A DNA stretch of 64,000 nt from assembly GCF_963506605.1 (NCBI RefSeq), contig NC_083277.1, positions 41,974,001 to 42,038,000 on the forward strand, read 5' to 3'. This stretch comes from Zootoca vivipara. Lineage: Eukaryota. Positions 33,899 to 59,769 of the stretch are shown here, piece by piece. Position 1 is the stretch's first letter. Every line of letters starts with the position of its first letter. The notes under the pieces were generated by a model that did not search any database, had not been told where the DNA came from, and worked only from the letters and a program-made list of their open reading frames with translations. A program made the position numbers and the translations under genes.

Positions 33899-34038
33899 AT
33901 TAGGATTAGGGCTGGGGTTAGGGCTAGAAGAAGTGTGCATGCACACGAAAGCTCATACCAATGACAAACTTAGTTGGTCTCTAAGGTGCTGCTGGAAGGA
34001 ATTTTTTTATTTTGTTTCGGTTAGGGTTAGGGTTAGGG
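33899..34038 (+). mobile_element. Penelope-like fragment flanked by telomeric repeats
   Basis: 23-bp TSD (33876-33898, 34039-34061); PLE segment 33927-34019; degenerate TTAGGG on the left, (TTAGGG)3 on the right. Confidence 0.8.
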
Positions 34039-40115: not shown

Positions 40116-40457
40116 TTATTTTTATTATACATGGTTCTCACCATGGTTCTCACCCTCCTCAATTAATCCCCACAACAGAGCTATGAGGTAGATTAGGCTG
40201 AGAGGCAGTGGCTGGCCTGAGGTCACCCAGTGAGCTTCATAACCGAGTAGGGATTTGAACCCTGGTCTCCCAGGGCCTACTCCGACACTCTTACCATTAC
40301 ACCACACTGGCTGGTGTGGTGTTATGCTGGCTGGTTGGGGTGGAAGGGAGTTGGAGTCCAACTACATATGGATGTAGCACCTTAAAGACCAACTAAGTTT
40401 TTATTTTGGTATGAGCTTTCGTGTGCATGCACACGAAAGCTCATACCAAAATAAAAA

Positions 40458-40497
40458 GGTATCTGACGAAGTGTGCATGCACACGAAAGCTCATACC
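40458..40497 (+). ncRNA. Minimal type I hammerhead ribozyme (Penelope-like element type), intact core
   Basis: GGTAT-CTGACGA-A-GTGTGCATGCACAC-GAAA-GC-TC-ATACC; stem I GGUAU/AUACC; predicted cleavage after C40492. Confidence 0.85.
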
Positions 40498-40507
40498 AAA
40501 ATAAAAA

Positions 40508-40547
40508 GGTATCTGACGAAGTGTGCATGCACACAAAAGCTCATACC
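40508..40547 (+). ncRNA. Second tandem hammerhead copy with a core mutation
   Basis: Identical to 40458-40497 except GAAA to AAAA at 40535. Confidence 0.75.
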
Positions 40548-41003
40548 AAAATAAAAACTTAGTTGGTCTTTAAGGTGCTACTGAAGGAAAATTTTTATTT
40601 TGTTTCGACTCAGACCAACACGGCTACCTACCTGTAACTACATATGGATGGTCACAGGTTAGCCATTCCTCCTAGACAGGGTACAGAGCTGAGTAATAAA
40701 AACTGCAGCTGCCTCTGTAGCTGTGGGGTGGGGAGGAAGGCAAAAGCCCAGAGAGAAACAATGGCACAGAGCAATCTGTATGCATAACTGTGAGACTCCC
40801 GCTTACACTGCAGTAGGGTGTGGCTTATAGTAAAGCACGTGATTATGTTCCAAGCTTCTCCTTCCCAACTTCCACTTGAGCATGAACTGGAAATGGACCT
40901 TTGACTGCAATTGGGGGGGGGGGTTAAGGAAAGGTGTTTCTACTTAGTTCTTTGAAGAGTGGGCAGCACATTTCTGGTCTAGCTGCAAGTGGGAAACACT
41001 CAC

Positions 41004-50587: not shown

Positions 50588-50650
50588 ATACCAATGACAA
50601 ACTTAGTTGGTCTCTAAGGTGCTACTGGAAGGAATTTTTTTATTTTGTTC
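50588..50650 (+). mobile_element. Penelope-like fragment inside an RTE 3' end
   Basis: ataccaatgacaaacttagttggtctctaaggtgct..., nearly identical to the 33927-34019 copy. Confidence 0.75.
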
Positions 50651-56860: not shown

Positions 56861-57489
56861 ATCTCCAGTGACAAGCAGACTCTCAGAACACAACCCTGAT
56901 GCCTGTATTTCTAATTTGGTGCACTAAGCTCTTGCTGTAAGGCACAACAATCTCTGCTCCTTCTGTTGCCATCCTAGAGCCTGCACTTTTCAGTCTTCAG
57001 CAGACTGGCATGAATGATTCCCCTGGAGGAAAGTGTGGTTGCAAAGATTTATAACTCACAGTCTGTCCACCTCTGCAATTCTCTCAATACCTTCCTTTGC
57101 AAGATATCCTGCCTGTTAAGCCTTAAGCTGGAACCCTGCTAGTAAGTAACTAGGTCTGCTTGAAAATCTTCTCCATTGCTGCTGGCCATGTAGCCTGACT
57201 ATGGAACATGGCAAGTACCTGCCGATCACCATCACATTTTCCTCCCCTCCCAGCTGGCTCCCTGCTACTCTCCACCTGCTGGCAGACGAGTGCTTACATT
57301 ATAGTAAACCCAAAGCTCTAAAGCAAGAATGGGGAATCATTTCTGGCCTGCAGACCACATATTTATCTCCCCACCCCAGCGGTGCCAATTTTGACAGGCG
57401 GGCAGGGCACTTCACTGGATCCCACCACTCCAGCCCTTACAATAGGGATGTGGGACCTGTGGCCCTGCAGACCATCAGTCTTCCAGTTA

Positions 57490-57713
57490 CAGGTAGGTAG
57501 CCGTGTTGGTCTGAGTCGAAGCAAAATAAAAAAATTCCTTCAGTAGCACCTTAAAGTCCAACTAAGTTTTTATTTTGGTATGAGCTTTCGTGTGCATGCA
57601 CACTTCTTCAGATTGCAGGTTATCTGAAGAAGTGTGCATGCACACGAAAGCTCATACCAAAATAAAAACTTAGTTGGTCTTTATGGTGCTACTGAAGGAA
57701 TTTTTTTATTTTG
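57490..57713 (-). mobile_element. Penelope-like element terminal remnant with inverted repeat
   Basis: 16-bp TSD atcagtcttccagtta (57474-57489, 57714-57729); same terminus as the 40375 copy, reversed. Confidence 0.85.
57618..57658 (+). ncRNA. Minimal hammerhead ribozyme
   Basis: GGTTAT-CTGAAGA-A-GTGTGCATGCACAC-GAAAGCTC-ATACC; stem I needs one bulged U. Confidence 0.75.
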
Positions 57714-58657
57714 ATCAGTCTTCCAGTTAGCCTTAAAACTCTTGAGTGAATAGCATTTAAAAAACAAAAATGATAAATCCAATGCTAACTTTTTAAAAGA
57801 ATAAATGGGGAGGACCTGATCGCCATGATTAAACTCTTCCAATCAACAATTCTGATTTTAAAAAGGAAATGTTAGTTAAATAACACTTACCGGTACATAA
57901 AAGAACGTTAGAGATTTATAGCAAAATAATGCTAATAAAGGGGGAAGGGACACCTTTCAGTCACAGTCATTTTAGCAACATTATTCCACTCTCGCCAATT
58001 AAATGCTTCCAGTCCCAAATGAACATTAACTACTTTTGTTTATGGGCAATTCATGGGTAGCAATGGGGGATCATGCTTAAATTAATAAGTGCTAGGCGCG
58101 CGCACACCCACACATCTTTTTTTAAAAAGGATTTCTTGGATTCTGCCTTGCCCACTTCCAAATGGCTGCTCAGGTGGGCTGGATCTTCCCTCCCCCATCC
58201 ACAGCCGCTGTGTCGTGCCCATGAACAGGCAGAAAAAGTGCAATATCCCCAGTAGTGTAGAAAGTCAATTGCAATTCCACTTATAGCTTACAGTAGAAAA
58301 GCAGTGATTTATTAGCGCTCAGAGCCTCCCGTTTGGAAGCAGCTTTGGTATAAGCTTTGGTTGGTTAGTCAGGCTTGCAGACCAATAATCCAATATCTTG
58401 CGAGAAGGTGATTGAGGGAAAGTTTTTCTTCTAGTCACAGTTGTTGTAACTTAAAGCCCCCGTAACAGAGGTTGTGCACGAACCATGCACTTAAAGCACC
58501 AAGAATACTCGAAACTGTTGGTAGTTAAGGGTGCTGGGAATCATAGCTCTTTGAGGGGTAAACTACAGTTCCCAAATTCTTGAGAGCAAGCAGTGTGTGT
58601 TTTAAATGTGTTTTTAATGTACATTTTAAAAAGGCTATTAAAAAAGTACTAGGCAAG

Positions 58658-58704: not shown

Positions 58705-59012
58705 TGTTATTTATCTATACCCTGCCTATATGTTCCCGGGGACATTAGATGAAATCCAGGGACATTCTAGGGATGGAATTTGTCTGGGCACTTATTTGCA
58801 AATACGGGGACTGTTCCCGGGAAACAGGGACGTCTGGTAACCCTAGTCTAGTATCCTCAGTGCAGAATGTGGATCCCTTTGGCACCCAGACTCCGCCTGG
58901 TCCTAACTAGGCATATGGAAGCCCCTGAGAACAGAATTTCATTTGGGAAAATGCTGCCCCCCCCGTCCCACAGCAAGCCTCCTTTTTTGCTGAGGTTCGC
59001 TCACAGCCTTAC

Positions 59013-59645
59013 CTGTGAAGTGCTGGTGGCAAATGCAGGTGTAGCCGCCCTCCTTGCGGGTGCAGACCCCTCCGTTGCGGCAGGGGTTGGAATAGCAGAG
59101 GTTGATCTCCATCTCGCAGTAGTCTCCGGTGAAGCCCTGGGGGCAGCGGCAGCGCAGGCCCGTTATGGGGTGGATGGGCCGGAAGAGGGTGGAGACGGAG
59201 GCGATGAAGGGAGCCGAGCTGTCAAACTTGAGCACCGAGATACACTTCATGTAGTTCTGGCAGGGCTCGCGGAGGCAGACGTTGTCATCGAAGGGGAGCA
59301 CCTCCAGCATGGAGACCGCGGTCAGGGTCATGCGCTTCATGTACAGCTGCTCCTGGAGCTCCTCCGAGCTGAAGAAATGGCCGCTGTGGGGCGCCATGGC
59401 AGAGAAGCTGACGTTAAGCACCTGCCCGCCGACGTCCGTGTCGTTCTGGATGTTGAAGATGAAGACGTCCTCCTTCGGGGTGGCCAGGATGGTGGCCACG
59501 CCCTCCAGGAAGTTGGCCAGGAGGGGAGAGAGGAAGCGCTCCTGCCACATGTTCTCCAGCCGCACCGTAATGCTGTTGGCCAGCATGTCCTCGGTGATGA
59601 CGATGACACGCAGGACGCACTGGGCTGTCACACTGTGGATCCCGT
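59013..59645 (-). CDS. CELSR3: CELSR3 exon 2 (end of cadherin region, Flamingo box, EGF-like repeats)
   Basis: ctgcag|ACGGG acceptor, ACAG|gtaagg donor; [14 protein letters not shown]...[13 protein letters not shown]...[13 protein letters not shown]...[10 protein letters not shown]; 633 nt, phase 1-1. Confidence 0.97.
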
Positions 59646-59769
59646 CTGCAGGGCAGAGAGGGGAGAGGTTAGGACAGGGGGTCGGCGGGAAGGGCTTCAA
59701 ACGCAAATGCTTGATGCAAGAGAAAGTGGCTCACAAATTGAGACTGGCAAGAGGAGCAGAACACAACAA

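What the first reader, a model, noticed from the sequence alone, without database searches (positions are those of the whole stretch)
40360..40650. 50-bp tandem array of minimal hammerhead ribozymes plus a perfect 60-bp palindrome
Seen: GTGTGCATGCACAC recurs at 40421, 40471 and 40521. Unit 40458-40497 is a complete minimal hammerhead: stem I GGUAU/AUACC, CUGACGA, palindromic stem II, GAAA, and a self-complementary AGCU in place of stem III. The predicted cut is after C40492. The next unit has G12 changed to A. Positions 40398-40457 form a perfect palindrome. The block has a 15-bp TSD. Established: Penelope-like elements carry such stem-III-less hammerheads, which cleave as dimers of tandem copies. 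Inference: cutting at consecutive sites would release a 50-nt RNA (AUACCAAAAUAAAAAGGUAUCUGACGAAGUGUGCAUGCACACGAAAGCUC) that is essentially only ribozyme. If circularised, it closes stem I with a 10-nt A-rich loop. The array could therefore be a rolling-circle or template-jump copy of a very small retrozyme-like circular RNA.
Basis: partly seen in the sequence, partly recalled or inferred. Interest (0 to 1): 0.8.

Follow-up and report, generated by a model that had tools for sequence, protein, structure and literature searches.

The report
Penelope retroelement stub with duplicated hammerhead
This is a short dead-end insertion of the tail of a very common lizard Penelope-like retrotransposon, whose built-in hammerhead ribozyme motif was locally duplicated; it is an odd but ordinary by-product, not a copy of a tiny circular RNA.

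Summary
There are 2.7 tandem 50-bp units (40421-40557), a perfect 60-nt palindrome (40398-40457), a 15-bp target-site duplication, one complete minimal hammerhead (40458-40497) and G12>A in the next unit.

The block 40375-40635 is a single 261-bp, ORF-less, 5'-truncated insertion of the 3' end of a Penelope-like element (PLE). It has that class's usual inverted-plus-direct layout, an optional ~33-nt AC-rich tail, and the family's own stem-III-less hammerhead. Four more copies of the family lie in the window, and public reads show it is enormously abundant in two related organisms. It lies antisense in a CELSR1 intron.

The circular-RNA reading is not supported:
- The novel junction (AAAATAAAAA|GGTATCTGA) is not the ribozyme's cut-and-ligation site.
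- Other family copies leave this sequence exactly there (canonical upstream ...TTTCAGT|GTATCTGAAG).
- The array runs on into the ordinary PLE tail.
- Only one of the three cores is intact.
- The unique flanks have no RNA coverage.

The duplication was most likely made when the insertion was resolved, perhaps with one later slippage. Whether the junction recurs elsewhere in the genome could not be tested. This scan noted many similar PLE fold-backs on other DNA of this genome, two with a 'triplicated stem II'; I did not check those. This is a known kind, of low interest.

The parts
40360..40374 (.). Left target-site duplication AACTACATATGGATG
   Evidence: Exact 15-nt direct repeat with 40636-40650.
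40375..40434 (-). Inverted arm. It is the reverse complement of helix II + GAAAGCUC + AUACC + AAAAUAAAAA + CUUAGUUGGUCUUUAAGGUGCUAC, and it carries the canonical junction into the downstream region.
   Evidence: Inverted repeat I1, arms 40374-40434 / 40521-40581, 60 of 61 complementary; the one mismatch is at 40420, the partner of 40535. Aligned with the other family copies.
40398..40457 (.). Perfect 60-nt palindrome centred on the self-complementary helix II (GTGTGCA|TGCACAC). This is the point where the inverted and direct arms join.
   Evidence: Inverted repeat I3, 30+30 nt, 100% complementary, no spacer.
40421..40557 (+). 50-bp tandem array, 2.74 units: a 37-nt partial unit plus two full units
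   Evidence: TRF period 50, 98% matches, score 267; repeat family D1.
40421..40447 (+). Unit 1. It has only the 3' half of the hammerhead (helix II, GAAA, AGCUC, AUACC) and no CUGANGA box. Potential cleavage site after C40442.
   Evidence: Sequence; not found by the descriptor.
40458..40497 (+). Unit 2, the only complete minimal hammerhead. Parts: GGUAU / CUGACGA / bulged A / GUGUG-CAUG-CACAC / GAAA / AGCU-C / AUACC. Monomer cleavage site after C40492.
   Evidence: Descriptor hit at 40463-40492 with helix II 6 bp and helix I 5 bp. RNAfold of the 40-mer gives helices I and II at -10.1 kcal/mol.
40508..40547 (+). Unit 3, the same motif with G12>A at 40535 (CpG>CpA). The catalytic core is presumably disabled. 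Potential cleavage site after C40542.
   Evidence: Sequence; missed by the descriptor. 95% of family RNA reads have G at this place (table 3).
40457..40458 (+). Non-canonical junction ...AAAATAAAAA|GGTATCTGA..., repeated identically at 40507|40508
   Evidence: Family contigs and RNA reads stop matching upstream of 40459 and 40509. They continue instead as ...TTTATTTCAGT (table 7).
40558..40602 (+). Canonical PLE 3' region downstream of the hammerhead, up to the 'short' 3' end class (...TTATTTTG)
   Evidence: Alignment with the copies at 33.9, 50.6 and 57.5 kb.
40603..40640 (+). Optional AC-rich 'tail' (TTTCGACTCAGACCAACACGGCTACCTACCTGT, plus possibly AACT)
   Evidence: Present only here and in the inverted arm of the 57.5-kb copy; the other copies end 33-38 nt earlier. 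This matches the 30-40-bp PLE tail described in PMC8557442 and PMC11167929.
40636..40650 (.). Right target-site duplication
   Evidence: The junction with the unique flank is confirmed by contigs from two samples (records 8 and 24).

Best explanation
Positions 40375-40635 are one 5'-truncated, ORF-less insertion of the 3'-terminal part of an abundant lizard Penelope-like element. That part comprises the hammerhead, about 60 nt downstream, and a 33-nt tail. The insertion was made by target-primed reverse transcription, and it lies antisense in a CELSR1 intron.

As in many PLE insertions, an inverted 5'-truncated copy sits next to the direct copy. Here the two arms meet at the 14-nt self-complementary helix II, which produces the perfect palindrome. 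The hammerhead is simply the family's own minimal, dimer-type motif.

The 50-bp periodicity comes from a non-homologous junction between the end of AAAATAAAAA and the start of GGTATCTGA. I infer that this junction formed once, while the two minus-strand cDNAs were being resolved, either by template switching or by end joining. I infer that it was then doubled, either by a second identical switch or by replication slippage between the resulting 37-bp direct repeats.

The locus is a dead copy. One core is intact, one is missing its 5' half, and one has lost G12 to CpG decay. There is no sign of transcription.

Shown: the anatomy, family membership, non-canonical junction, abundance, strand relative to the host gene, and lack of flank expression. 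Inferred: the order and mechanism of the events that formed the junction.
For: Anatomy:
- The window holds four more copies of the same family. They lie at 33.9 kb, at 50.6 kb and as the two arms of a fold-back at 57.5 kb (own 16-bp TSD). None has the 50-bp repeat.
- There are two classes of 3' end, 33-38 nt apart. This is the PLE 'tail'.
- An inverted 5'-truncated copy next to the direct one is a listed PLE hallmark (PMC8557442). The anole PLE protein nicks and extends both target strands and starts reverse transcription internally (PMC11167929).

The motif:
- It matches the PLE minimal hammerhead consensus: a bulge between A9 and 10.1, a long helix II, G10.1-C11.1, and a palindromic 15.2/16.2 pair (PMC4209133).

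Reads:
- Word depth over 40380-40640 is 1e5-1e6, against 4-16 in the unique flanks, in two organisms.
- Family contigs and 621 + 400 RNA reads break off just upstream of 40509/40518 with a different upstream sequence.
- The family consensus has A where both units here have C (40467, 40517).
- 94% of laid RNA reads run on into unlike sequence, and depth is 0 beyond 40665.
- There is no pile-up of read ends.

Folding:
- For the two-unit RNA the double-hammerhead fold scores -18.6 kcal/mol, against -37.0 for a fold in which adjacent helix-II palindromes pair with each other.
- For the whole insert the values are -104.1 against -124.5 kcal/mol.

Host gene:
- CELSR1 lies on the minus strand (E 1e-103).
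Against: - The same blunt junction occurs twice, which a single random event does not give. It needs a second step, or a template that already carried the junction.
- The unit boundaries enclose almost exactly the ribozyme, and the G at 40458/40508 extends helix I to 5 bp.
- Two other notes in this genome describe PLE fold-backs with a 'triplicated stem II' (not checked). If these have the same structure, a reproducible mechanism or a propagating subfamily would be favoured.
- 61 of 4,472 laid RNA reads were not flagged as partial. For 150-nt reads that may require spanning a junction; I could not resolve this.
Confidence: 0.8

Rival explanations
1. The array was inherited from its template. 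On this view a master locus (a nascent hammerhead-only 'mini-retrozyme' derived from the PLE end) already carries 50-nt tandem units followed by the normal tail. Its transcripts are copied by PLE reverse transcriptase into several loci.
For: - Two identical junctions, and a private C7 variant shared by both units.
- The CTGACGA variant exists in a minority of family DNA and RNA (table 3).
- Other 'triplicated stem II' fold-backs are noted in this genome (untested).
- A 2026 preprint reports tandem hammerhead 'non-LTR retrozyme' families with consensus lengths down to 51 bp, derived from PLE ends.
Against: - No other copy in this window has the junction.
- The bulk of family DNA and RNA diverges exactly at the junction.
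- No skip-50 or back-50 joints appear among the best-supported joints (table 5).
- The 50-nt unit lacks the tail region where PLE reverse transcription starts, so it could not be mobilised alone.
Confidence: 0.12
2. One reading: hammerhead cleavage at consecutive sites releases a 50-nt RNA that is circularised. Rolling-circle reverse transcription or template jumping on that circle then produced the array.
For: - The unit equals helix I, the core and a 10-nt A-rich linker. A 50-nt circle can fold with helices I and II (-5.1 kcal/mol).
- Circular intermediates have been proposed for PLEs and retrozymes (PMC4209133, PMC7229834).
Against: - The circle's ligation junction (C17-A1.1) is the ordinary sequence. 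The novel junction lies elsewhere and must exist before any circle can form.
- The array is continuous with the linear PLE 3' region and tail on one side, and with an inverted arm bearing the canonical junction on the other.
- Known metazoan retrozyme circles are about 170-400 nt (PMC7229834).
- PLE minimal hammerheads cleave poorly in vitro, or only with protein. No reads ending at the cleavage site were found in the anole (PMC4209133, PMC11167929) or here.
- In dimer mode, site 40492 depends on the G12A core.
Confidence: 0.04
3. The copy number of the 50-bp unit, or the palindrome, is an assembly artefact in a repeat-rich hairpin region.
For: - No public contig spans the whole block.
- PLE tandem/inverted structures are known to trouble assemblies (PMC8557442).
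Against: - The tail-to-flank junction is confirmed in two samples (records 8 and 24).
- The units carry a private variant and a single CpG change, as real diverging copies would.
- The block is only 261 bp, well within a single long read.
Confidence: 0.03

Closest known systems
Minimal hammerhead ribozymes of Penelope-like elements (Cervera & de la Pena 2014, PMC4209133; Lunse, Weinberg & Breaker 2017, as cited in PMC6765202)
   Same: It has the CUGANGA and GAAA boxes and an unpaired nucleotide between A9 and 10.1. Helix II is long and closed by G10.1-C11.1, helix I is 4-5 bp, and there is no loop 3. The AGCU is palindromic, so helix III can form only between two motifs. It sits at the end region of a PLE.
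   Different: - Helix II here is a perfect 14-nt palindrome. In tandem RNA, adjacent helix-II palindromes pair with each other and out-compete the active fold.
- The spacing between motifs is 50 nt. The usual spacing is the family's roughly 140-nt partial-tandem unit or a roughly 3-kb full unit.
Complex tandem/inverted PLE insertions with a 30-40-bp tail (Craig et al. 2021, PMC8557442; Frangieh et al. 2024, PMC11167929)
   Same: It is 5'-truncated, has an adjacent inverted 5'-truncated copy, has the optional tail at one end only, has a TSD, and has a very high copy number.
   Different: - The internal repeat is not the normal partial tandem (tail followed by the next hammerhead; joint 40641>40509). 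It is a 50-bp sub-unit bounded by a junction with no evident homology.
- The sequence family differs from Poseidon_Ac, whose hammerhead and tail differ.
Non-LTR retrozymes of animals (Cervera & de la Pena 2020, PMC7229834; Li, Clavereau & Pollet 2026 preprint, doi 10.64898/2026.07.22.740005)
   Same: Tandem units each carry a type I, dimer-dependent hammerhead and derive from a PLE terminal region. Consensus lengths down to 51 bp are reported.
   Different: - There are only 2.7 units, and only one complete motif.
- There is no evidence of unit-length or circular RNA, and no evidence of other loci.
- The units sit inside one PLE insertion rather than forming an array of their own.

Membership tests
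PLE-type minimal type I hammerhead | Conserved boxes CUGANGA and GAAA in the right order and spacing | tested here: met
   Unit 2: CUGACGA at 40463-69 and GAAA at 40485-88. Unit 3 has AAAA at 40535-38. Unit 1 lacks CUGANGA.
PLE-type minimal type I hammerhead | Long helix II closed by G10.1-C11.1, with an unpaired nucleotide between A9 and 10.1 | tested here: met
   A40470 is the bulge and GUGUG(C)/(G)CACAC gives 5-6 bp. These are the features listed in PMC4209133.
PLE-type minimal type I hammerhead | No loop 3, palindromic 15.2/16.2, U16.1 and H17 | tested here: met
   A-G-C-U-C at 40488-92.
PLE-type minimal type I hammerhead | Self-cleavage, as a dimer | not testable with these tools
   No pile-up of RNA ends at 40442, 40492 or 40542, but standard RNA-seq is a weak test. 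Thermodynamics disfavour the double hammerhead by 18-20 kcal/mol.
PLE-type minimal type I hammerhead | Match to a curated covariance model | tested here: inconclusive
   No Rfam hammerhead family reached E<=10. The only hits were sub-threshold matches to miRNA hairpin models, caused by the palindrome. My reading, not tested: the Rfam hammerhead models expect a helix III, which this motif lacks.
Penelope-like element insertion (5'-truncated copy) | Parent element encodes RT plus GIY-YIG endonuclease | not testable with these tools
   This copy has no ORF, and Pfam scans of eight of the window's long ORFs found no PLE ORF. A full-length copy of this family could not be fetched. An earlier scan note (s1-848849) reports one in this genome; it is unchecked.
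Penelope-like element insertion (5'-truncated copy) | Hammerhead motif in the terminal repeat region | tested here: met
Penelope-like element insertion (5'-truncated copy) | Optional 30-40-bp tail, giving two classes of 3' end | tested here: met
   Copies end either at ...TTATTTTG(TTTCG) or 33-38 nt further on, at ...CCTACCTGT(AACT).
Penelope-like element insertion (5'-truncated copy) | Adjacent inverted 5'-truncated copy, and a TSD | tested here: met
   Arms 40374-40434 / 40521-40581 and the 15-bp TSD. The copy at 57475-57730 has the same layout.
Non-LTR retrozyme | Tandem repeat with at least two consecutive units holding complete hammerheads (operational criterion of the 2026 preprint) | tested here: not met
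   Only unit 2 is complete. Unit 3 would have qualified before the G12>A change.
Non-LTR retrozyme | Unit-length linear and circular RNAs | tested here: inconclusive
   One RNA run, about 6% of it read. There are no ends at the predicted sites, and the reads come from other copies. No small-RNA or RNase R data were available.
Non-LTR retrozyme | The same unit at several genomic loci | not testable with these tools
   There is no eukaryotic genome collection to search. The exact-ORF look-up was empty.

The most novel reading that the evidence does not exclude
The locus is a member, or the birth site, of a hammerhead-only 50-nt tandem element. That would be the smallest retrozyme-like unit so far: essentially nothing but a dimer-type ribozyme, riding on the PLE tail for reverse transcription. 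The other 'triplicated stem II' fold-backs noted in this genome would then be its siblings.
Probability: 0.08. Interest if true: 0.55.

Novelty: new member of a known kind. Interest (0 to 1): 0.2.

Why it matters
It matters little by itself. It is a clean, young example of how PLE insertions are resolved at a palindromic hammerhead helix. It also shows how a terminal PLE fragment can start a short tandem repeat, which is the first step proposed for the origin of animal non-LTR retrozymes. If the same junction turned out to recur at many loci, it would define a retrozyme-like unit close to the minimum size possible, and that would be worth an experiment.

Tried and rejected
Searches that gave nothing:
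- Rfam in permissive mode found no hammerhead family, only sub-threshold miRNA-hairpin matches caused by the palindrome.
- Exact-pattern scans for the hammerhead found 0 hits in metagenome contigs (2 scans), prokaryotic genomes and viral contigs.
- Exact look-up of four ORFs spanning the junctions found none in the collection.
- The held supplement of the 2026 preprint was only an oligo order form.
- The Lunse et al. 2017 paper is not held.

Mechanisms considered and rejected on the sequence:
1. Alternating snap-backs about the helix-II centre and the AUACC-loop-GGUAU centre, which are 25 nt apart and so would translate by 50 nt. Rejected because CUGACGAA is not the reverse complement of GAAAGCUC, so the units are true direct repeats.
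2. Fold-back of the first cDNA on itself as the source of the inverted arm. Rejected because the arm carries the canonical AAAAA-CTTAG junction, not AAAAA-GGTAT.
3. Back-splicing. The canonical upstream ...TTTATTTCAG does look like an acceptor, but no GT donor follows AAAATAAAAA.
4. Reverse transcriptase skipping a hairpin base, which would also delete the A-rich segment.
5. Realignment by microhomology. Only GGU is shared, and it would leave CTTAGTT in the repeat.

Inference dropped:
- I first read the DNA contig counts at 40535 as showing that most genomic copies have A. I dropped this, because short contigs with G fit unit 2 equally well and are laid there instead.

Full report
**Observation**

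- TRF reports a period-50 array at 40421-40557, with 2.7 copies and 98% matches.
- The repeat finder reports three in-register units, a perfect 30+30-nt palindrome at 40398-40457, and an exact 15-nt direct repeat at 40360-74 and 40636-50.
- I ran a descriptor for the stem-III-less hammerhead. It requires CUGANGA, an optional bulge, helix II, GAAA, and A-N-N'-U-H. It hits 40463-40492, plus two motifs in another element at 57.6 kb. That is 3 hits in the window, against a mean of 0.005 in 200 dinucleotide-preserving shuffles.
- The next unit has A for G12 at 40535, a CpG>CpA change.
- The first unit lacks the CUGANGA box altogether.

**What the block is**

The inverted repeat is longer than the palindrome: arms 40374-40434 and 40521-40581, with 60 of 61 positions complementary. 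Name the segments as follows:
- a = GGTAT
- c5 = CTGACGAA
- S = GTGTGCATGCACAC
- c3 = GAAAGCTC
- a' = ATACC
- L = AAAATAAAAA
- D = CTTAGTTGGTCTTTAAGGTGCTAC
- T = the rest, ending in the tail

A prime on any other segment means its reverse complement. The 261-bp insert then reads D' L' a c3' S | c3 a' L | a c5 S c3 a' L | a c5 S c3* a' L D T, where c3* carries the G12>A change.

The window holds four more copies of the same family: at 33926-34019, at about 50590-50650, and a fold-back at 57475-57730 with its own 16-bp TSD and two arms. None has the 50-bp repeat.

The copies end at one of two places 33-38 nt apart. One is ...TTATTTTG(TTTCG). The other is ...CAGACCAACACGGCTACCTACCTGT(AACT).

High 5' truncation, an adjacent inverted 5'-truncated copy, a 30-40-bp optional tail and a hammerhead in the terminal repeat are the published hallmarks of Penelope-like elements (PMC8557442). 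The purified anole PLE protein nicks and extends both target strands. It also starts reverse transcription at two internal sites about 34 nt apart (PMC11167929).

The motif matches the PLE minimal hammerhead consensus in every listed feature: an unpaired base after A9, a long helix II with G10.1-C11.1, and palindromic 15.2/16.2 (PMC4209133). The sequence family is not Poseidon_Ac.

**Reads**

I laid three sets of DNA contigs and one raw RNA run on 40320-40760.
- Word depth is 1e5-1e6 over 40380-40640, against 4-16 in the unique flanks. This holds in organism A (two independent samples) and in a related organism B. The family is therefore extremely abundant.
- Contigs from two samples run from the tail into the unique right flank (records 8 and 24), which confirms that junction.
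- Family copies stop matching the locus just upstream of 40459 and 40509. They continue instead as ...TTTATTTCAGT. So the canonical sequence is ...TTTCAGT|GTATCTGAAGAAG, and the junction L|GGTAT is not canonical.
- The consensus has A where both units here have C (40467, 40517), TT at 40590-91 and C at 40603.
- A joint from 40641 back to 40509 ('goes back 133') shows the family's normal partial tandem of about 140 nt.
- Of 4,472 laid RNA reads, 94% run on into unlike sequence. Depth is zero beyond 40665 and before 40365, and no position collects read ends. The RNA therefore comes from other copies, and this locus is not detectably transcribed in that sample.
- 61 reads were not flagged as partial. 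I could not resolve whether any of them spans a junction.

**Context**

An ORF on the minus strand at 58939-59706 matches CELSR1 residues 935-1158 (E 1.2e-103; EGF domain). The insertion therefore lies in a CELSR1 intron, and the hammerhead strand is antisense to the host gene. The host pre-mRNA carries no complete motif from this locus.

**Folding**

- The 40-nt unit folds into helices I and II at -10.1 kcal/mol.
- For the two-unit RNA, the double-hammerhead structure scores -18.6 kcal/mol. The minimum free energy is -37.0, in a fold where the two self-complementary helix-II segments pair with each other.
- For the whole insert, the best structure containing the double hammerhead is 20 kcal/mol above the minimum, which is the long fold-back hairpin.

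In the double-hammerhead topology (Forster et al. 1988, as drawn in PMC4209133), the enzyme strands of one motif act on the cleavage site of its partner. This is established knowledge applied by inference. The only intact core (unit 2) would then cut at 40442 or 40542. Site 40492 would depend on the G12A core. The present sequence therefore does not predict a 50-nt product.

**Why the circle model is not supported**

- A circle made by hammerhead cleavage and ligation joins C17 to A1.1, which is the ordinary sequence. The novel junction lies 15 nt downstream of the cut site, so it must exist before any 50-nt unit can be released.
- The array is continuous with the linear PLE 3' region and tail, where reverse transcription starts.
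- The inverted arm carries the canonical L-D junction.
- Known metazoan retrozyme circles are about 170-400 nt (PMC7229834).

**Most likely origin**

Because c5 occurs only in the direct units, at least one L|a junction must date from the insertion event. I infer that it arose when two minus-strand cDNAs were resolved, one primed from each target strand. They joined at the palindromic helix II, and a non-homologous switch or end-joining made L|a. The second copy then came from a repeat of the same switch, or from slippage between the 37-bp direct repeats. The G at 40458 and 40508 differs from the consensus T. It may be a subfamily variant, or an untemplated base.

**What remains open**

I could not search the rest of the genome for the junction.
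- Scans of metagenome, prokaryotic and viral collections found nothing.
- Exact ORF look-ups were empty.

Earlier notes of this scan list many PLE fold-backs in this genome. Two are described as having a 'triplicated stem II'. I did not check them. If they share this junction, the rival reading of a propagating hammerhead-only unit would gain weight.

A 2026 preprint already reports PLE-derived tandem hammerhead families with consensus lengths down to 51 bp. It proposes that PLE ends seed such arrays locally. Even that reading would therefore extend a known kind.

Noticed in passing
window 57475-57730: A second PLE fold-back of the same family has a 16-bp TSD (ATCAGTCTTCCAGTTA). Its inverted arm has the full tail and its direct arm ends at the short site. 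It carries two opposed complete minimal hammerheads, 57611-57582 (-) and 57624-57653 (+), around an 8-nt centre TGCAGGTT.
   Followed up: partly
window 40632-40642 and 57478-57492: Both long-tail copies meet their target at the same letters (...CCTACCTGTAACT), and both TSDs begin with (T)AACT. Family reads also match up to 40638-40642. This suggests 4-5 nt of microhomology between the nicked target and the RNA at the start site of reverse transcription, or a target preference.
   Followed up: partly
window 33926-34019: A 94-nt copy of the same PLE end starts inside the CUGAAGA box (GAAGAAGTG...). It is flanked on both sides by short TTAGGG-type repeats inside a longer direct repeat. Another report of this scan already covers it.
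   Followed up: no
window 50590-50650 and 33960-33975: A subfamily of the element has ATACCAATGACAAAC in place of ATACCAAAATAAAAAC. Many public contigs diverge from the locus at 40499/40549 in the same way.
   Followed up: no
window 58939-59706 (-): A CELSR1 coding exon (last cadherin repeats and first EGF domain; E 1e-103 to PDB 8vy2) shows that the host gene runs on the minus strand.
   Followed up: partly
window 40160-40335: There may be a SINE-like repeat directly upstream of the insertion. Support is thin: a very weak tRNA-model match at 40240-40311 (-) and raised public-read depth at 40335-40364.
   Followed up: no
window 40575-40640 (family RNA): RNA reads from the family are abundant and strand-biased, about 4:1 with the first mate on the + strand. 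Whether this means sense or antisense transcripts depends on the library type, which is not on record.
   Followed up: no
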